Shown in pieces: positions 26,215 to 32,280 of a stretch of DNA of 64,000 bases. The position numbers and the translations under genes were made by a program. Below the pieces are notes generated by a model that saw nothing but the letters and a program-made list of their open reading frames with translations, had not been told where the DNA came from and searched no databases. The stretch lies in the sequence record NC_023719.1. One strand, 5' to 3'. The first letter of the stretch is position 1, and every line of letters starts with the position of its first letter.

Positions 26215-27774
26215 TTGGAAAAGACAATAGAAGATTTTGGGCTCTTAATAAGAGAAGGATTTGGCGGTTCTATTGGTTATGGAACTAATCATGCTAAATC
26301 AGATGTTGATTTACGAGGATTATTTATACCAAAGAGACATTTCTTATTAGGCATAAATAACGTAGATCAATTTAATTGTAAGACTGTAAAAGATACTAAA
26401 TATGGTAAGTCTGATGATATTGAATACTTTTCGTTACAGAAATTTATAAATCTAGCTTTAGAGGGTAACCCAAATGTTGTAGAACAATTATTCATTAATA
26501 GAGAACACGTAACTTTTGAAAATGAATTTGGTAAAGAATTGTATGAATTAAGATACGAATTCCTTACTAAAAATGCATATGGCAGGTTCGGCGGATATGC
26601 CCACGCACAAATGAAACGTATGGATTCAAAAGGCAATCACAATGGCCATAGCTCTCATAGAGATATTATAGAAGAATTTGGTTATGACACCAAACATGCT
26701 ATGCATTTAGTTAGATTATATCAAATGGGTATCCAGATCTTAAGAGATGGAGAATTATATACTTATAGGCCAAACCGACAAGAATTACTTGATATCCGTT
26801 ACGGGAAATATACTTTAAGTCAAATAAAAAATTATGCTGAAGAGTTAAATAAAGAGTTAGAAGATGCTATGATGAAATCTAAGATTCCTGACTATCCTGA
26901 TTTTGATAAAATCAATAGATGGGTAATAGATGTAACAGATAGAGCTCATGGTTTAAATACGAAAAAAGGCGTATTTAAAGGTGTAACTTTCAATGTTTTA
27001 CCATTAGAGTATGAAATGGTAGACAAATGTTCTATTTTAACTGTTGCAAATAGACTTTTACGTAAAAAAGACAAAGCTCAAGCGGTTGGAGTAGCAGTAC
27101 CTTATAAAGATTGGTTTACTGGTTTAAGAAAGTTTGAAGAATTTAAATTTGAAAAAACTAGAATAGACAATATCCATAAAGTAATAAACAAAGTTAGATC
27201 TTGCGACCCTAAATTGGTAGATATGTTATATGCTTCAGAGAAACATATCATCTTCGAACATCCAATGGCGAAAGAATTTAAAGACAAAATGAAAACAATG
27301 TTATCAACAAAATACGCTTACAATAAAGCATATAGCTACGTTACTGGTAATTTAAAGGCTATGCAAAACTGGGAAAACCTAAAAGATAGATGGGAAAAAG
27401 AGAGAGCTACAACAAATAAGAAAATGACAGACTATCCACCAGTACCTAAGAAAACTTTATCTGAAAACGCTGCTAGAATGACTAAGTATGGTTATGATAC
27501 ACTATCCGCTTTTGATATTGTACATGTGTTAAAATTGTTTATTGAACTAATGAATACTGGTACTATTGTCGATAGTAGAGCTTATGAACCAGAATTATAT
27601 GCTATCAAACAAGGTCATTATAAGACGTTTGAAGAATTTAATGATTACGTTCAAGAGTTATTAGCGGAATTAGAAAAAGCAAAAGATAATTCAGTTTTGA
27701 CTAATCATAATTTTAACGAAATCGAAGATTGGTTGATTGACTTTATTGATCGTTTCCATCAACAATTAGATTAA
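26215..27774 (+). CDS. RlaP/YcgL-like (DNA Pol-beta superfamily) nucleotidyltransferase, tandem duplicated
   Basis: GGSIGYGT...SDVDLRG, GNPNVVE.LF, YDTKHAMHLVRL; second degenerate copy in the C-terminal half. Confidence 0.85.
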   Translation: MEKTIEDFGLLIREGFGGSIGYGTNHAKSDVDLRGLFIPKRHFLLGINNVDQFNCKTVKDTKYGKSDDIEYFSLQKFINLALEGNPNVVEQLFINREHVTFENEFGKELYELRYEFLTKNAYGRFGGYAHAQMKRMDSKGNHNGHSSHRDIIEEFGYDTKHAMHLVRLYQMGIQILRDGELYTYRPNRQELLDIRYGKYTLSQIKNYAEELNKELEDAMMKSKIPDYPDFDKINRWVIDVTDRAHGLNTKKGVFKGVTFNVLPLEYEMVDKCSILTVANRLLRKKDKAQAVGVAVPYKDWFTGLRKFEEFKFEKTRIDNIHKVINKVRSCDPKLVDMLYASEKHIIFEHPMAKEFKDKMKTMLSTKYAYNKAYSYVTGNLKAMQNWENLKDRWEKERATTNKKMTDYPPVPKKTLSENAARMTKYGYDTLSAFDIVHVLKLFIELMNTGTIVDSRAYEPELYAIKQGHYKTFEEFNDYVQELLAELEKAKDNSVLTNHNFNEIEDWLIDFIDRFHQQLD

Positions 27775-27890: not shown

Positions 27891-28457
27891 ATGGGAGAAA
27901 AGGTTTATAAAAACTTAAGATGTAATATTGAGGTGGCTAAACGATTAGATGAATTAATACCATCAAATATTATGATTGACGATATTATATTTATTTGTAT
28001 TGGTACAGATAGGAACACGGGAGATTCACTAGGTCCTTTTGTTGGAACATATTTAAACGCAATTGGATACACTAACGTAATTGGAACTATAGATGAACCT
28101 TTGCACGCTTTAAATTTAGAAGAAATAGTACAAAAAATACCAAAAGATAAATATATAATTGCAATAGATTCATGTGTTTCTCAGATAGAGGAATTATTGC
28201 ATAGTGTAACAGTTAAAAATACCCCTGTACGTCCCGGATCTGCAGTGAATAAAAAATTACCTAGTGTAGGTGATGTATCAATCCTAGTGAATGTTTGTTA
28301 TTGTCCAAAAGAATTAAGAGAATTAGCTTCTTCGGTTTTAGCATCCGTTAGATTGTCACATATAATACAATTATCAAAGTCAGTTGTTAAGTCTATTAGT
28401 AAAGTGTTTCCTTTAGAAGGACATTCATATGGTGAAGTAGCATCTTCTGAAAAATAA
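27891..28457 (+). CDS. yyaC: Spore protease YyaC-like (GPR-type aspartic protease family)
   Basis: CIGTDRNTGDSLGP.VG, GT...P.HA.NL, IIAIDSC, PGSAV.K.LP.VGD signature. Confidence 0.9.
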   Translation: MGEKVYKNLRCNIEVAKRLDELIPSNIMIDDIIFICIGTDRNTGDSLGPFVGTYLNAIGYTNVIGTIDEPLHALNLEEIVQKIPKDKYIIAIDSCVSQIEELLHSVTVKNTPVRPGSAVNKKLPSVGDVSILVNVCYCPKELRELASSVLASVRLSHIIQLSKSVVKSISKVFPLEGHSYGEVASSEK

Positions 28458-28558: not shown

Positions 28559-28614
28559 TTTTATAGATAATATCTAACCAGATATTAAAACATACAAACT
28601 AAGGTGGTTATGAA

Positions 28615-28911
28615 ATGACAACATTGGAGAAAATTTTATCAAAAGAAGCTTTTAACATTCAAGATTTAGCAGAGGTAACTAAACGAAAAACACAAACTAT
28701 TCGTTCTTGGGAGAAAAAAGGGATTATTAAAGATGCTGATATGCGTAATTCAAACAACTGGCGACAATATTCTAAAGAGCGATTTGTAGAAATCTTAAAT
28801 CAAATTTTGAGTCATCCATGGGAACGCCAAGTAATTAAAAATGTGGCCGAAGTAGAATACGTTATTAATGAATTAACTAACAAACAGGAAAAAGCAGCAT
28901 CTGATGAGTAA
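28615..28911 (+). CDS. MerR-family HTH protein
   Basis: IQDLAEVT....QTIRSWEKKGII...RNSNNWRQYS. Confidence 0.85.
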   Translation: MTTLEKILSKEAFNIQDLAEVTKRKTQTIRSWEKKGIIKDADMRNSNNWRQYSKERFVEILNQILSHPWERQVIKNVAEVEYVINELTNKQEKAASDE

Positions 28912-29875
28912 TAAAGTTCACATTATATTAGATAATGTTTACGCAAAAATTATAGGTGCAACTAAAGATATTGAACATGCTATTTGGAATGAGCTATCAT
29001 TTTTAGTTGAAGAATTCGGCCAAGAGCACCCTAGAAGAAGACATTTATTTAATAGAAAAACCAAAAAAACATATACAGGCTTAGTACCTTATGTAGAAAG
29101 AATTCTCAAAGAAATGCACGTTGACTATGATATTGTTGATAGTCGTGATATACCAGAAAAGAATGCTGATTTTAAATTAGCAGAATTCGTAGATGATGCA
29201 AAAACAATTCCATTGACTTTTAGACCATATCAAAAAGAAATTGTTGACCGATGCGAACCGCGCGAATGTTTACAAGCAGCGACTGGAGCGGGTAAAACAT
29301 TTATGATGGCAGCGATTATTGAAAAATTTAATGTTAAACCAGTATTAGTATTTGCTGATAAAATGTCTTTAGTTACTCAAATTAAAGAAGAGTTTGAAAA
29401 ATTCTTAGGTATTGAAATTGGAATAATTGGTGGCGGAGTAAAGGAAGTAAGAGATATTACAATTTGTTCAGTGCAATCTATGCTTAAAGAAGACGAAATG
29501 CTTAAAGAAGCAAAAATGATTATGTTTGATGAGTGTCTTTCGTATGATTCAAAAGTTTTAATGCCTAATGGTTCTTATGAAGAAATTGGAAAATTAGTTG
29601 AACAAAAATACGAAGGTTTAGTAATGTCTTATAATCATAAAGCTGGTAAAATGGAACCTAAAAAAGTAGTTAGTCATTCGAAAACTCTATTAAGCCAAAA
29701 TAACAAAAAATTTATGAAGCTAACTGTTAAAAAAGCCAATGGTGAAAAAGAAGTTATTGAATGTACAGATAACCATCGAATTTGGTCGGAAGATTCGAAG
29801 AAATATATTCATGCAAGAGATTTAGTAAAAGGACAACAAGTAGTAACAACGAAAGGAAGTTCTGAAAATGGATAA
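28904..29875 (+). CDS. SF2 (UvsW-like) helicase N-terminal half fused to split-intein N fragment
   Basis: Q-motif RPYQ, motif I ATGAGKT, motif II MFDE immediately followed by intein CLSYD. Confidence 0.9.
   Translation: MSNKVHIILDNVYAKIIGATKDIEHAIWNELSFLVEEFGQEHPRRRHLFNRKTKKTYTGLVPYVERILKEMHVDYDIVDSRDIPEKNADFKLAEFVDDAKTIPLTFRPYQKEIVDRCEPRECLQAATGAGKTFMMAAIIEKFNVKPVLVFADKMSLVTQIKEEFEKFLGIEIGIIGGGVKEVRDITICSVQSMLKEDEMLKEAKMIMFDECLSYDSKVLMPNGSYEEIGKLVEQKYEGLVMSYNHKAGKMEPKKVVSHSKTLLSQNNKKFMKLTVKKANGEKEVIECTDNHRIWSEDSKKYIHARDLVKGQQVVTTKGSSENG
29534..29875 (+). mobile_element. Split intein, N fragment (113 aa)
   Basis: Block A CLSYDSKVLM and block B IECTDNHRIW (TxxH), then a stop codon. Confidence 0.92.
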
Positions 29876-30089
29876 TGTAACGCCTATAAAACTAAATGAG
29901 AAAAAACGAACATATAAATATGTTCGAGATGGAAAAATTGTTGAAGTAATTTTAGAAAACGTTATTGAATTAATTGTACGAGAATCTGGTTCACATAAGA
30001 TTAAAACATCTGACGGAAAGCTACATTATTTACCATCTGATTATATTCATATTGAAATAGAAGATGATAAAAAAGAGTGGACAAATTAA
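29868..30089 (+). CDS. Small beta-rich hypothetical protein between the split helicase halves
   Basis: AAAGGA RBS; start overlaps the helicase-N stop; terminator follows. Confidence 0.8.
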   Translation: MDNVTPIKLNEKKRTYKYVRDGKIVEVILENVIELIVRESGSHKIKTSDGKLHYLPSDYIHIEIEDDKKEWTN

Positions 30090-30100
30090 TATTATGCAGC

Positions 30101-30130
30101 AAAGAGAAGGTTTAAACCTTCTCTTTTTTT
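30101..30130 (+). terminator. Rho-independent terminator separating the two helicase halves
   Basis: aaagagaagg-tttaaa-ccttctcttt plus T-run. Confidence 0.9.
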
Positions 30131-30160
30131 ATTGCCCTAATTAAGTATATACAATTATAA

Positions 30161-30193
30161 TGTTAATGATTTTTAAAGAAATACTTATAATAT
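30161..30193 (+). promoter_or_regulatory. Putative phage middle promoter for the helicase C half
   Basis: TGTTAAT-N18-TATAATAT. Confidence 0.55.
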
Positions 30194-30267
30194 ACATATC
30201 TCCATAGAGAGCGAAATATATTTAAATACACGTAGAAAACATATGAGATTCTAAAGGGAGGATTTAC

Positions 30268-30684
30268 ATGTTCAAAAATGTTGCAGAGTTGTTTTCTAAG
30301 AATCTAGAATCAATTCTAAATAAATATCATTTAGACCCTAATATTGATAATTTTAGCTATTGTATGTCAGTTATGCAAAATAACGAACATAGCGAAAAAA
30401 GTTTACAGAATTTAAAAACTGCATTAAATAGTAATGTTCTTTCTAATTTAATAGAAGACTTAGATAATTTGTCTATTATGCTAAATACTTCTAATTTTTT
30501 AATGGATAATGAAATAGATGAAACATATGAATTAGAACAAGATAATAGCGATATTGAAATTGGTACTATTGAAGAAATTGAATATGTTGAAATGTCAGAT
30601 TGTGAATATGAAGAAACATATGTTTATGATATTGGAGTAGAAGACAATCATAACTTCTTTGCTGAAAACACGTTAGTACACAAT
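30268..30684 (+). mobile_element. Split intein, C fragment with about 95-aa N-terminal extension
   Basis: Block F VYDIGVEDNHNFFA and block G LVHN with +1 Cys at 30685. Confidence 0.9.
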
Positions 30685-31536
30685 TGTCACCATTTACCGT
30701 CAAATACAATGAATGAAATAGCTAGAAAAGCTGAAAATGCTTACTATCGTATTGGCGTATCAGCTACTCCTTGGCGGGATGCTGGAGATGATATTTTAAT
30801 TGAGGCTATTCTTTCTAAACGAAAAACTGAAAATTCTATAAATGCTTCTAAATTAATTGATCTAGGATTCTTAGTACCTTGTTCGATTTACTTTGTACCA
30901 ATGAAACAAGTTTTCCCAGGAAAAAGCTATCATAGCGTTTATAAAAAGGCAGTTGTAGAAAATGATAGTCGTAACAAAGCTGCTGTTAAAATAGCACATA
31001 AAATGTTAACAACAAAACAAATGACTACTCTTATTTTGATCCAACAAGTAAAGCATGGGGAAATTTTACAAAAAATGTTATTTGATTTAATACCTGAAGA
31101 GTCGTTTACTGTTACTGTTAAAAATCCAAAAAATGGTAAAGAACAGTTGGTAAGAGTTAGAAATATTGAATTCTTATCGGGTCAAGATGATGCCATTAGA
31201 CGAAAAGCTGTTATTCAAGCAGCTAAAGAAAAGAAAGTAAAAGTCCTTATTGGATCAACTATTGCAGATGAAGGATTAGATATTCCTTCGTTAGACTGTT
31301 TAATATTACTTGGTGGGGGCAAAAGTTCTACAAGAGCCTTCCAACGAATTGGGAGGGTATTACGATTATACACTGATCCAGTAACGAAAGAACCAAAGAA
31401 GAGAGCTATTTGTTTTGATTTTGTCGATTACACGCCTATGCTAAGACGACATTCGAGGGTTCGAGAGAAGTTGTATTTAACTGAAGAGAAATGGGAAATT
31501 AAATTCTTTAATCCAAATTTATTGAACGACGATTAA
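30268..31536 (+). CDS. Split-intein C fragment fused to SF2 helicase C-terminal half
   Basis: GGGAGG RBS; VYDIGVEDNHNFFAENTLVHN|CHH, then SAT (III), STIADEGLDIP (V) and QRIGRVLR (VI). Confidence 0.9.
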   Translation: MFKNVAELFSKNLESILNKYHLDPNIDNFSYCMSVMQNNEHSEKSLQNLKTALNSNVLSNLIEDLDNLSIMLNTSNFLMDNEIDETYELEQDNSDIEIGTIEEIEYVEMSDCEYEETYVYDIGVEDNHNFFAENTLVHNCHHLPSNTMNEIARKAENAYYRIGVSATPWRDAGDDILIEAILSKRKTENSINASKLIDLGFLVPCSIYFVPMKQVFPGKSYHSVYKKAVVENDSRNKAAVKIAHKMLTTKQMTTLILIQQVKHGEILQKMLFDLIPEESFTVTVKNPKNGKEQLVRVRNIEFLSGQDDAIRRKAVIQAAKEKKVKVLIGSTIADEGLDIPSLDCLILLGGGKSSTRAFQRIGRVLRLYTDPVTKEPKKRAICFDFVDYTPMLRRHSRVREKLYLTEEKWEIKFFNPNLLNDD

Positions 31537-31560
31537 GAGAGGTGATATGCCTCTCTTTTT
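31536..31560 (+). terminator. Rho-independent terminator
   Basis: agagagg-tgatatg-cctctct plus T-run. Confidence 0.8.
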
Positions 31561-32280
31561 CTTCTTTTGAGAAGAAATCAGTATTCAAAGTGATTAATAT
31601 TTAGTGACATGATTTCTTTAAAACTGAAGAATATTTGATTTTTATATCTTTACCTACATTATGATAAAAGTCATATTGAAAATTCATTTTTGAGATTCTT
31701 TGAAAGAATAAAATCAACTTCTTTTGATTCATAGAATGCAGTGTGTGATTCACAGAGTGCAGCTATAAATATAATTAATTATTTAGATAATAAATAAAAG
31801 AAATATATAAGATAAGAAAAATAAAAAGAAATAAAAGAACAGATTAGTGCTGCGCACGCCTTTATATTTGTTTCTCTTTACATACTATATTTAAATCAGT
31901 TTTCAGTACTGAAAACAATCTGAAAAGATTATCTTTTAGTGATTTGATTTTAATTAAAAGATATTTTATTTGTATTTTTATGTTTATTACTATATTGGTA
32001 AAAAAGTCACATCAGATTTGAATTATCTTTAATTTGAAAAGAAATAAAAAGTATCATTATCTAGTTTTATTTGTTTGTTTTAATTTCCGTTTTTATAATA
32101 AGTTAGAGTTACTGTTTGTTTCTTGAAAGATGTAATTTCAAAATGCTTATTTGGTATTTCTAAAATACAGTACTTGTAATAAGTTTTATTCACTACCGTT
32201 AAAACAATTCTAACTTTTTATTAAAATAACAAACATCGCAAGATATCAATAAGACTAATTTTATTGAGAGGAAGATTTAT
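31561..32280. other. Long AT-rich non-coding region, candidate replication origin
   Basis: About 720 bp with no ORF in the track; 17-bp direct repeat with 21-bp period (31725, 31746); directly upstream of the initiator-loader-helicase operon. Confidence 0.4.

What the first reader, a model, noticed from the sequence alone, without database searches (positions are those of the whole stretch)
28904..31536. SF2 helicase split into two separately transcribed genes joined by a naturally split intein
Seen: gene 1 ends its helicase part at MFDE and continues CLSYD...CTDNH (intein blocks A and B) to a stop. Gene 2 has its own RBS and reads VYDIGVEDNHNFFAENTLVHN|CHH (blocks F and G). Splicing would rebuild motif II as DECHH in a 210+283 = 493-aa UvsW-like helicase. 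The halves are separated by another ORF, a strong terminator and a new promoter, so this is not a frameshift. Known: split inteins trans-splice (DnaE; 'fractured' phage genes). Inference: helicase activity depends on co-expression of two transcription units, which could act as a post-translational AND gate on replication/recombination.
Basis: partly seen in the sequence, partly recalled or inferred. Interest (0 to 1): 0.9.

Follow-up and report, generated by a model that had tools for sequence, protein, structure and literature searches.

The report
Split-intein helicase gene in phage G
Bacillus phage G encodes one of its DNA helicases as two separate genes whose products carry the two halves of a self-removing protein element (a split intein) that should stitch them into one 493-residue enzyme. 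This is a real but already known kind of arrangement, here in a culturable phage and never annotated.

Summary
The window is Bacillus phage G. gp221 (28904-29875) is the first helicase lobe up to motif II ...MFDE, followed by a 113-aa N-intein (Cys1, TDNH). gp223 (30268-31536) ends its intein part ...VYDIGVEDNHNFFAENTLVHN and continues CHH... into the second lobe. A natural intein-free ortholog of exactly 493 aa reads MIMFDECHHLPSNTM across the junction. A close relative has a contiguous 155-aa mini-intein at the same site. About 50 N-halves and 47 C-halves in metagenomic jumbo phages keep every splicing residue. In at least three contigs the halves lie on opposite strands. This is therefore a genuine naturally split intein of the 'fractured gene' type (Dassa 2009), and its closest solved relative is the NrdJ-1 split intein. 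Phage G has lost the Vsr-like zinc-finger homing endonuclease gene that relatives carry between the halves. Its C-intein carries a 98-aa helical N-terminal leader that is a free-standing ORF in the nearest relative. Phage G also has an intact paralog elsewhere in its genome. The terminator between the halves is strong, the promoter is unproven, and the 'AND gate' idea has no support. Trans-splicing itself has not been tested. Verdict: new member of a known kind, moderate interest.

The parts
28615..28911 (+). gp220, a MerR-type HTH protein whose 3' end overlaps the helicase start. It is a conserved upstream partner and the probable first gene of the N-half transcription unit.
   Evidence: Pfam MerR_1 E 3.8e-6. 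The same gene precedes the helicase in L005, L006, L008, L011, L014 and L096.
28904..29533 (+). N-extein (gp221 residues 1-210): N-terminal domain plus RecA-like lobe 1 with Walker A (ATGAGKT), ending with the first half of motif II (MFDE).
   Evidence: ResIII E 5.8e-19 and DEAD E 4.6e-7. 79% identity to the intein-free ortholog P0016. dN/dS 0.07-0.20 against relatives.
29534..29875 (+). N-intein (gp221 residues 211-323, 113 aa, net charge +6, pI 9.3) plus stop codon. Block A is Cys1 (CLSYD) and block B is CTDNH.
   Evidence: TIGR01445 37.7 bits, above the cut-off. It aligns with the first ~105 residues of the contiguous mini-intein of P0123 at 71/113 identity, and all invariant family columns are kept. 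dN/dS 0.21-0.48.
29842..30560 (+). Hypervariable cassette between the conserved intein halves. DNA homology to relatives stops at 29841 and resumes at 30561-30567.
   Evidence: blastn against L005, L006 and L008. The corresponding cassettes in those relatives are 1.4-2.3 kb and differ in content.
29868..30089 (+). gp222, a 73-aa orphan ORF overlapping the gp221 stop. It is a small all-beta protein of unknown function and is not an endonuclease by any test run.
   Evidence: No Pfam, NCBIfam or PHROG family. Its only homolog, P0218 (53% identity), sits in an unrelated locus. AF2 pLDDT 62 and Foldseek best E 0.18. hhalign against the intein profile gives probability 0.2%.
30101..30134 (+). Intrinsic-terminator-like hairpin (11-bp stem, 4-nt loop) followed by a T-run. 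This is the probable end of the gp220-gp221-gp222 unit.
   Evidence: dG -15 kcal/mol; 0 of 200 shuffles fold as well.
30132..30161 (+). Sigma-A-like promoter candidate TTGCCC-18-TATAAT. A second perfect TATAAT lies at 30186-30191. Weak evidence only.
   Evidence: 10/12 match, but the count of such sites is not above the shuffles. Searches show the motif does not recur in the window.
30255..30263 (+). Ribosome-binding site AAAGGGAGG, 4 nt upstream of the gp223 ATG (6 nt after its GGAGG core).
   Evidence: Read directly from the sequence.
30268..30561 (+). 98-aa acidic (net -13) N-terminal leader of gp223, predicted helical and fused in frame to the C-intein. It is homologous to a free-standing 94-aa cassette ORF in the closest split relative.
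   Evidence: 51% identity over residues 1-75 to L005 ORF94. Only 2 hits in 1.84 billion representatives: itself and that ORF. DNA 30289-30500 is 70% identical to L005 5995-6211. dN/dS 0.44. AF2 gives four helices over residues 2-80 at pLDDT 60-80.
30562..30684 (+). C-intein proper (gp223 residues ~99-139, net charge -12). Block F is VYDIGVEDNHNF and block G is TLVHN.
   Evidence: TIGR01443 28.3 bits, above the cut-off. 85% identity to the L005 and L006 C-inteins. dN/dS 0.06-0.18. It aligns with the last ~45 residues of the contiguous mini-intein.
30685..31536 (+). C-extein (gp223 residues 140-422): +1 Cys completing motif II (DE|CHH), motif III (SATPWR) and RecA-like lobe 2, plus stop codon.
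   Evidence: Helicase_C E 2.5e-11. 92% identity to intein-free P0016. AF2 pLDDT above 90 for residues 190-420.
31535..31567 (+). Terminator-like hairpin after gp223.

Best explanation
gp221 and gp223 are the two halves of one XPB/UvsW-type SF2 DNA helicase that was broken inside motif II (DE|CHH) by a class-1 HINT intein. That intein has itself been split at the canonical endonuclease-insertion loop.

Proposed mechanism:
1. After translation, the basic N-intein (113 aa) and the acidic C-intein (last ~41 aa of the 139-aa leader of gp223) associate and fold into one HINT domain.
2. They splice in trans. The steps are an N-S acyl shift at Cys211, trans-thioesterification to the +1 Cys140 of gp223, cyclisation of Asn139 and an S-N shift.
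3. This releases a 493-aa (~56.5 kDa) helicase with a native MFDECHH junction, plus two excised fragments of 12.8 and 16.2 kDa.

Historically the locus is a 'fractured gene': a mobile intein and free-standing homing-endonuclease cassette that invades this helicase in phage-G-like jumbo phages. In phage G the Vsr-like zinc-finger endonuclease gene has been lost. An unrelated small gene (gp222) with a terminator has been inserted. A formerly free-standing cassette ORF has been fused in frame to the C-intein.

Shown: the anatomy, the homology, the allelic states, conservation of the catalytic residues and purifying selection. Inferred: that trans-splicing occurs, that it is needed for activity, and the order of the rearrangements.
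For: 1. Intein signatures score above curated cut-offs on both genes.
2. The intein-free ortholog P0016 is 493 aa with junction MIMFDECHHLPSNTM and is 79% / 92% identical to the two exteins. The joined extein DNA flanks of phage G align colinearly with its gene at 81.4% over 1481 nt, with no gap at the junction.
3. Contiguous 138-158-aa mini-inteins occupy the same site in 43 listed clusters. One is P0123, a close relative in a syntenic locus. Phage G's halves align to its two ends, with the break in the loop between block B and block F.
4. All 52 N-inteins start with Cys after DE, and 48 of them match the strict block-B pattern C-T-x-x-H-K/R-I. All 48 C-inteins end with Asn followed by Cys. 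All invariant columns of the family alignment are kept in phage G.
5. dN/dS is 0.06-0.48 in both intein halves against three relatives.
6. In L014, L021 and L013 the C-half is on the opposite strand, 2-6 kb away. Only trans-splicing can join those products.
7. The three states (free, contiguous, split) interleave on the extein tree. At least 41 changes are needed, and at least 14 for 'split' are forced by well-supported branches. This is typical of a homing element.
8. Cassettes of L005, L006 and L015 carry a conserved 294-297-aa protein with three C2H2 fingers and a Vsr-like D...YWH...WE(D/Y)E motif (weak DUF559 hit). In P0032 it is fused in frame to the N-intein. The same endonuclease type is described for fractured genes in PMC2677866.
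9. The family profile matches the solved NrdJ-1 split intein best (E 6e-21).
10. Charge complementarity is +6 / -12, the same polarity as gp41-1 and gp41-8 in PMC2677866.
Against: - No experiment or proteomic evidence for the spliced product in phage G was found.
- The 98-aa leader on the C-intein is unusual. Only 5 of 47 C-halves have long leaders, and this one could slow or block association.
- Phage G has an intact 456-aa paralog elsewhere, so loss of function of this copy might be tolerated.
- dS values are near saturation (0.7-2.3), so the dN/dS figures are rough. They average over both lineages and cannot exclude recent inactivation in phage G.
- The endonuclease assignment of the relatives' cassette protein rests on a motif and a sub-threshold Pfam hit (E 0.033).
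Confidence: 0.85

Rival explanations
1. Regulatory AND gate. The two halves sit in differently timed transcription units, so active helicase appears only when both programmes overlap. The 98-aa leader may add a further conditional layer to trans-splicing.
For: There is a strong terminator between the halves and a strong RBS, with a possible promoter, for gp223. Terminator-like hairpins also follow the N-half in L006 and L008. Opposite-strand halves in L013, L014 and L021 prove that separate transcription is compatible with the system. The leader is under weak purifying selection (dN/dS 0.44) and is predicted to fold.
Against: Promoter-like matches are not above chance and the motif does not recur. 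L005 has no terminator between the halves. Cassette content is hypervariable and is dominated by a selfish endonuclease gene. Intein-free and contiguous alleles are interleaved with split ones among near-identical exteins, so the split state is not required for the helicase's role. There are no transcript data.
Confidence: 0.1
2. Decaying pseudogene pair. The helicase was inactivated by the fracture, the halves no longer splice, and the intact 456-aa paralog supplies the function.
For: An intact paralog exists in phage G (L023 9998-11368). The homing endonuclease gene has been lost and the cassette rearranged. The C-intein carries an unusual leader.
Against: Both ORFs are intact with good RBSs. 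Every catalytic and invariant intein residue is kept. dN/dS is well below 1 for exteins and intein halves. The same paralog pair (one fractured, one intact) recurs in another jumbo-phage contig (L019/L026), so co-existence is ancestral rather than a sign of decay.
Confidence: 0.06
3. Non-covalent two-subunit helicase. The intein halves act only as a dimerisation module and the enzyme works without peptide-bond formation.
For: Split-intein halves bind tightly (general knowledge). There is charge complementarity of +6 / -12.
Against: A ~150-aa HINT domain would sit between D-E and C-H-H of motif II, in the ATPase site. Strict conservation of Cys1, TxxH, the terminal Asn and the +1 Cys in about 100 halves is explained by splicing chemistry, not by binding alone.
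Confidence: 0.04
4. Sequencing or assembly artefact, or a simple frameshift in one contiguous intein-containing gene.
For: None beyond the general possibility.
Against: About 690 bp separate the intein halves. This stretch holds a different ORF, a terminator and a new RBS. The same break is present in relatives at 60-80% identity from independent samples.
Confidence: 0.01

Closest known systems
'Fractured genes' with split inteins in marine phage metagenomes: gp41-1, gp41-8, NrdJ-1, IMPDH-1, NrdA-2 (Dassa et al. 2009, PMC2677866)
   Same: - Both halves lie on the same strand.
- The break is at the canonical endonuclease-insertion loop, in a DNA-metabolism enzyme of a phage.
- The cassette between the halves brings its own control elements.
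- Relatives carry a Vsr-like free-standing endonuclease gene.
- The polarity (N-intein positive, C-intein negative) matches gp41-1 and gp41-8.
- The family profile hits the solved NrdJ-1 intein best (E 6e-21).
   Different: - The host protein is new for this arrangement: an XPB/UvsW-type SF2 helicase broken at motif II. Dassa lists the gp41 DnaB-type helicase, NrdA/J, IMPDH, DnaE, ligase and terminase.
- Phage G itself has no endonuclease gene, like Dassa's gp41-7 locus.
- It has instead an orphan gene and a terminator.
- Its C-intein gene carries a 98-aa captured leader. Dassa's C-parts are 33-54 aa, apart from an atypically split terminase.
- It is in a cultured phage, not a metagenome read.
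Contiguous inteins in the A511 gp111-like helicase of Herelleviridae: phiNIT1 orf959b, BSP10 'intein-containing DNA helicase' (PMC5977233), Lb338-1 gp136
   Same: The insertion point in motif II is identical...ADE|CL... and ...HN|CHH.... Block F/G sequences are similar.
   Different: Those inteins are one polypeptide, about 230-470 aa by subtraction of flank positions. The larger presumably holds an endonuclease domain. Their exteins are only about 25-30% identical to phage G's. They splice in cis.
Cyanobacterial DnaE split intein (Ssp/Npu)
   Same: It is a naturally split class-1 intein with Cys1 and +1 Cys that trans-splices an essential replication enzyme. In relatives L013, L014 and L021 the halves are also on opposite strands, as with dnaE-n and dnaE-c.
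   Different: The charge polarity is opposite (DnaE N-intein negative, C-intein positive; PMC2677866). The DnaE halves are hundreds of kb apart and fixed in a whole clade. Here the split, contiguous and empty alleles still interconvert among close relatives.
Archaeal XPB/Rad25 (PDB 6p4f, 2fwr) and T4 UvsW (PDB 2oca) helicases
   Same: The reconstituted exteins match them across both RecA lobes, via P0016: E 5e-29 for XPBII and E 3e-10 for UvsW.
   Different: Neither is known to be split, from my own knowledge. Family assignment between XPB-like and UvsW-like is not settled here.

Membership tests
Class-1 intein (HINT domain) | Block A with N-terminal Cys/Ser directly after the N-extein | tested here: met
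   Cys211 follows MFDE. All 52 N-halves of the family have Cys at this position.
Class-1 intein (HINT domain) | Block B TxxH | tested here: met
   CTDNH at gp221 287-291. The strict pattern C-T-x-x-H-K/R-I is found in 48 of 52 N-halves, and C, T and H are invariant columns in the alignment of 18 contiguous family inteins.
Class-1 intein (HINT domain) | Blocks F and G ending in (His)-Asn, followed by a +1 Cys/Ser/Thr | tested here: met
   VYDIGVEDNHNF...TLVHN|C. All 48 C-halves end xN + C.
Class-1 intein (HINT domain) | Significant match to curated intein profiles or solved inteins | tested here: met
   TIGR01445 37.7 bits against a 24.5 cut-off and TIGR01443 28.3 bits against a 15.6 cut-off. 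The family profile matches NrdJ-1 at 6e-21, DnaX at 7e-20, and also DnaB, DnaE and gp41-1.
Class-1 intein (HINT domain) | Protein-splicing activity | not testable with these tools
   Needs expression and western blot or mass spectrometry.
Naturally split intein | The two intein parts are encoded by separate ORFs, each fused to one extein | tested here: met
   gp221 stops at 29875. gp223 starts at 30268 with its own RBS.
Naturally split intein | Break at the loop between block B and block F (the endonuclease-insertion site), leaving a complete HINT fold when the parts are combined | tested here: met
   Piecewise alignment to the contiguous mini-inteins P0123 and P0129. N-intein lengths are 101-114 aa and C-intein lengths 37-53 aa across the family.
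Naturally split intein | Halves conserved as halves in relatives, including arrangements that exclude cis expression | tested here: met
   About 53 N-halves and about 47 C-halves. Opposite-strand halves occur in L013, L014 and L021.
Naturally split intein | Trans-splicing demonstrated | not testable with these tools
   No experiment was found in the literature searched.
Fractured gene sensu Dassa 2009 | N-half and C-half on the same strand and adjacent, in a DNA-metabolism gene of a phage | tested here: met
Fractured gene sensu Dassa 2009 | Free-standing homing-endonuclease gene between the halves | tested here: not met
   Phage G has only gp222, which has no family, no fold match and no nuclease motif. 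Relatives L005, L006 and L015 do carry a zf-C2H2 + Vsr-like gene. Phage G is therefore an endonuclease-less derivative, like Dassa's gp41-7 locus.
SF2 helicase, XPB/Rad25-UvsW group | Walker A, motif II DExH, motif III SAT and a C-terminal RecA lobe with motif VI, in order across the joined exteins | tested here: met
   ATGAGKT, DE|CHH, SATPWR and QRIGRVLR read. ResIII and Helicase_C hits. PDB hits to XPBII, Rad25 and UvsW via P0016.
T4 UvsW orthologue | Closest relationship to UvsW rather than to other SF2 groups | tested here: inconclusive
   UvsW 2oca scores E 3e-10, against XPBII at 5e-29. KVP40 uvsW matches gp223 at 24% identity.

The most novel reading that the evidence does not exclude
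The 98-aa acidic helical leader that phage G (and, with unrelated sequences, four other lineages) has fused to the N-terminus of the C-intein is not inert baggage. It would be a natural 'cage' or timing module that makes trans-splicing conditional, for example by masking the acidic C-intein until a partner or condition appears. Combined with a separate promoter for gp223, this would give the phage post-translational control over when this helicase becomes active. It would be a natural conditional split intein.
Probability: 0.08. Interest if true: 0.75.

Novelty: new member of a known kind. Interest (0 to 1): 0.45.

Why it matters
Natural split inteins are few, and they are heavily used as protein-ligation tools. 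Most phage examples are known only from metagenomic reads.

- This one sits in a cultured, sequenced phage of a laboratory host (B. megaterium), so trans-splicing and its biological role can be tested by genetics.
- Its family offers, within closely related helicases, all three states (empty site, contiguous mini-intein, split intein) plus halves inverted onto opposite strands. It also shows endonuclease genes free-standing, fused to the N-intein, or lost. This is an unusually complete series for the 'gene-breaking' model of how split inteins arise.
- Practically, it corrects the GenBank annotation, which lists two separate 'DNA helicase' genes with no intein.
- It adds about 50 natural N/C pairs with a DE/CHH junction as candidate orthogonal ligation tools.

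Tried and rejected
- **gp222 as a homing endonuclease or intein remnant: rejected.** It has no Pfam, NCBIfam or PHROG family. Its only homolog lies in an unrelated locus. hhalign against the intein profile gives probability 0.2%. The AF2 model is low-confidence and Foldseek's best E is 0.18.
- **A later start codon giving a canonical short C-intein: rejected.** No RBS precedes the internal ATGs (read). The leader is homologous to a real ORF with dN/dS 0.44.
- **A second intein in the window: none** (tblastn).
- **Structured RNA or a group I intron in the cassette: none** (Rfam).
- **A recurrent phage promoter motif upstream of gp223: not found**.
- **Stronger charge complementarity in split than in contiguous family members: not seen.** Means are +4.0 / -5.6 for split and +3.8 / -5.75 for contiguous.
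- **Helicases 'split without an intein' (P0054, P0071, P0145, P0177):** P0177 starts 25 bp from a contig end and P0145 starts at the same position; P0054 and P0071 look like frameshifted calls, though their contigs were not checked.
- **Single-protein scan of IMG/VR:** it found only phage G itself. The alignment-based scan was needed.
- **Literature searches for a prior description of the phage G split intein:** nothing found. Subscription journals are not covered.
- **PDB profile search for the nuclease domain of the relatives' cassette protein:** it returned only zinc-finger hits.


Full report
**What the window is.** Positions 28600-31700 are 100% identical to Bacillus phage G (JN638751 / NC_023719, 497.5 kb, host B. 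megaterium), record positions 152600-155700. The record calls gp221 'DNA helicase' and gp223 'gp223 / DNA helicase'. It mentions no intein.

**The observation.**
- gp221 (28904-29875, 323 aa) runs through Walker A (ATGAGKT) to ...AKMIMFDE. It then continues CLSYDSKVLM...ECTDNHRIW... to a stop.
- gp222 (29868-30089, 73 aa) overlaps that stop.
- An 11-bp hairpin plus T-run follows at 30101-30134 (dG -15 kcal/mol; none of 200 shuffles folds as well).
- gp223 (30268-31536, 422 aa) starts after AAAGGGAGG. It reads ...TYVYDIGVEDNHNFFAENTLVHN|CHHLPSNTM... and carries Helicase_C.
- Curated profiles agree: ResIII/DEAD on gp221 and Helicase_C on gp223. TIGR01445 (intein N-terminal) and TIGR01443 (intein C-terminal) both score above their cut-offs.
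- The 'new promoter' is weaker evidence. TTGCCC-18-TATAAT is a 10/12 match, but such matches are no more frequent here than in shuffled sequence, and the motif does not recur in the window.

**Is the junction real?** A search of 5.8 billion proteins with gp221 returned natural intein-free orthologs. One is P0016, which is exactly 493 aa and reads ...SSKMIMFDECHHLPSNTMAEIARKAENAYYRIGVSATPWRD. It is 79% identical to the N-extein and 92% identical to the C-extein. It lies in a syntenic locus behind the same MerR-like gene. Joining the two extein DNA flanks of phage G in a script gives a sequence that aligns colinearly with the P0016 gene. Identity is 81.4% over 1481 nt, with no gap at the junction. 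The predicted ligation product therefore exists in nature as an uninterrupted gene.

**Is it one intein cut in two?** A close relative, P0123 (650 aa; syntenic locus L011), has a contiguous 155-aa mini-intein at the same DE|CHH site.
- Phage G's N-intein aligns with its first ~105 residues (71/113 identical).
- The last ~45 residues before Cys140 of gp223 align with its C-terminal part.
- The break falls in the loop ...LVKGQ-x-V / ...IEDIEY. This is the position where endonuclease domains sit in large inteins and where all canonical split inteins are broken (PMC2677866).
- A profile of 18 contiguous family members hits solved inteins over its full length. The best hit is the NrdJ-1 split intein (8ubs, E 6e-21), followed by DnaX, DnaB, DnaE and gp41-1.

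More distant phages have contiguous inteins at the identical point in their A511-gp111-like helicases: phiNIT1 and BSP10 (Herelleviridae) and Lactobacillus phage Lb338-1 (PMC5977233). An intein-free cousin reads DEVH (vB_BpsS-140).

**How common and how conserved is the split state?** The 215 clusters listed by the two searches were classified by alignment to the two exteins.

| State | Clusters | Notes |
|---|---|---|
| Intein-free | 60 | |
| Contiguous mini-intein | 43 | intein 138-158 aa |
| N-halves | ~53 | N-intein tails 101-114 aa |
| C-halves | ~47 | heads mostly 37-53 aa |

- All 52 analysable N-inteins begin with Cys after D-E, and 48 of them match the strict block-B pattern C-T-x-x-H-K/R-I.
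- All 48 C-inteins end in Asn followed by Cys, with block F VYD...NHNF.
- Phage G keeps all invariant family columns.
- Pairwise dN/dS of phage G against three split relatives is 0.21-0.48 for the N-intein, 0.06-0.18 for the C-intein and 0.07-0.20 for the exteins. dS is near saturation, so these are rough values.
- Phage G's N-intein is basic (+6, pI 9.3) and its C-intein is acidic (-12). This is the polarity Dassa et al. report for gp41-1 and gp41-8.

**Proof that the family works in trans.** In three large contigs the C-half gene lies on the opposite strand, 2-6 kb from the N-half.
- L014 is from a 301-kb contig.
- L021 is from a 181-kb contig.
- L013 is from a 322-kb contig, and the same protein also occurs on a 390-kb contig.

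No read-through, frameshift or bypass could join those products. Only trans-splicing, or non-covalent assembly, can.

**What lies between the halves.** DNA homology between phage G and its split relatives stops at window 29841, about 30 nt before the gp221 stop. It resumes at 30561-30567, the start of the canonical C-intein. The ~720 bp in between is a hypervariable cassette.

| Locus | Cassette content |
|---|---|
| L005 (closest split relative, 80% / 90% identity) | 94-aa ORF overlapping the N-half stop; 294-aa protein; 172-aa ORF; then a C-half with a 45-aa C-intein |
| L006 | Related 297-aa protein plus other ORFs |
| L015 | 106-aa ORF overlapping the N-half stop, then a related 297-aa protein |
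| L008 | Unrelated ORFs |

The 294-297-aa protein has three C2H2 zinc fingers (E 6.6e-11). It also has an invariant D...YWH...WE(D/Y)E C-terminal motif with a weak DUF559 hit (E 0.033). This corresponds to the Vsr-like D / F-W-H / D motif that defines the homing endonucleases of 'fractured genes' (PMC2677866). In P0032 the protein is fused in frame to the N-intein.

On a maximum-likelihood tree of the C-exteins, the free, contiguous and split states are thoroughly interleaved. At least 41 changes are needed, and at least 14 for 'split' are forced by well-supported branches. Several pairs of near-identical exteins differ only in state. That is the signature of an actively homing element, not of a single ancient break.

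**What is special about phage G.**
- It has no endonuclease gene. gp222 has no family or fold match. Its one homolog sits between NfeD and flotillin genes in another phage, and it is unrelated to inteins.
- A terminator follows gp222. L006 and L008 also have terminator-like hairpins after the N-half, while L005 has none.
- The first 98 residues of gp223 are not intein. Residues 1-75 are 51% identical to the free-standing ORF94 of L005. Window DNA 30289-30500 is 70% identical to that ORF. In 1.84 billion representative proteins, only these two sequences match.
- Relative to an L005-like ancestor, phage G has therefore lost the endonuclease gene and ORF172, fusing ORF94 in frame to the C-intein. 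It has also gained gp222, a terminator and a possible promoter upstream.
- AlphaFold models the leader as four helices (pLDDT 60-80). It models the C-intein and the motif II-III region as disordered in isolation, as expected for a split-intein half. The second RecA lobe is modelled confidently.
- Four other C-halves carry long, unrelated leaders. The N-terminus of the C-intein is where endonuclease domains attach in large inteins, so an appendage there should be tolerated.

**Mechanism proposed.**
1. gp220-gp221-gp222 and gp223 are expressed, possibly as two units.
2. The basic N-intein and the acidic C-intein associate.
3. Cys211 forms the thioester, which is transferred to Cys140 of gp223.
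4. Asn139 cyclises.
5. A 493-aa, ~56.5-kDa helicase with native motif II DECH is released. The 12.8-kDa N-intein and the 16.2-kDa leader plus C-intein are excised.

The chemistry is inferred from the conserved residues and from established intein chemistry. It was not observed.

**Helicase type.** The helicase is an SF2 enzyme nearest to archaeal XPB/Rad25 (E 5e-29). It is more distantly related to T4 UvsW (E 3e-10). It sits next to DnaC-like, DnaB-like and primase genes.

**Rivals.**
- A regulatory AND gate is not excluded, but it has no positive evidence beyond the terminator.
- A decaying pseudogene pair is made conceivable by an intact 456-aa paralog elsewhere in phage G (L023 9998-11368). 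It is contradicted by intact ORFs, intact catalytic residues and purifying selection. The same paralog pair also recurs in another jumbo contig (L019/L026).
- Non-covalent assembly does not explain conservation of the splicing residues.
- An artefact is excluded by the cassette and by the independent relatives.

**Comparison and novelty.** The arrangement is that of Dassa et al.'s fractured genes. The site is that of known contiguous Herelleviridae helicase inteins. What appears new:
- the host enzyme for a split intein (an XPB/UvsW-type SF2 helicase at motif II);
- its presence in a cultured phage, where it is unannotated;
- the captured leader on the C-intein;
- the breadth of the family, with all allelic states and inverted halves.

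No paper describing it was found in the searchable library. That library omits most subscription journals, so prior mention cannot be excluded.

I rate it a new member of a known kind, interest 0.45. 

Noticed in passing
L023 9998-11368 (phage G record ~304-305 kb, outside the window): Phage G encodes a second, intein-free paralog of this helicase (456 aa, motif II YYDECHNLP, 46% identity to the N-extein). The same pairing of one intein-bearing (contiguous there) and one intein-free copy occurs on a 416-kb IMG/VR contig (L019 and L026).
   Followed up: partly
L014 6001-6930 (+) and 9109-10083 (-); L021 10001-10915 (+) and 14243-15181 (-); L013 6001-6948 (+) and a C-half on the - strand beyond 12890: In three jumbo-phage contigs the two helicase halves lie on opposite strands, several kb apart, with unrelated genes between them. 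This is a DnaE-like fully dispersed split gene.
   Followed up: partly
L005 6314-7198; L006 6899-7792; L015 7321-8214; P0032 residues ~310-565: A conserved 294-297-aa protein with three C2H2 zinc fingers and a Vsr-like D...YWH...WE(D/Y)E C-terminal domain sits between the halves in relatives. It is the probable homing endonuclease. In P0032 it is fused in frame to the N-intein. C2H2 fingers are unusual in phage nucleases.
   Followed up: partly
P0081 (residues ~130-340) and L024 8959-10001: Some relatives carry a second intein inside the Walker A motif (AATGAGK|C...HN|TFMMAG) of the same helicase, in addition to the motif II intein.
   Followed up: no
window 28615-28911 with 28904: The MerR-type HTH gene gp220 overlaps the helicase start codon by 8 nt. 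It precedes the helicase in six of the nine related loci whose gene tables were read (L005, L006, L008, L011, L014, L096); in L013 and L015 the upstream gene has no Pfam hit. This suggests a conserved regulator-helicase pair.
   Followed up: no
window 26215-27774 and 27891-28457: Upstream genes are an RlaP-family nucleotidyltransferase (the record's note says 'NrdC') and a DUF1256/YyaC-like 'spore protease'. Both are syntenic in relatives L005 and L006. The record's note for gp218 looks doubtful.
   Followed up: no
window 29868-30089; L010 5001-5255: gp222's only detectable homolog (P0218, 84 aa, 53% identity) lies between NfeD-TM and Band_7/flotillin genes on a 119-kb phage contig. gp222 therefore behaves as a small mobile 'moron'-like gene.
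   Followed up: partly
P0125, P0127 (L008 6992-8275), P0154, P0124 (L006 7794-9236): Four other C-halves carry N-terminal leaders of roughly 100-150 aa in front of the C-intein, of at least two unrelated sequence types. In-frame capture of cassette sequence by the C-intein gene is recurrent.
   Followed up: partly
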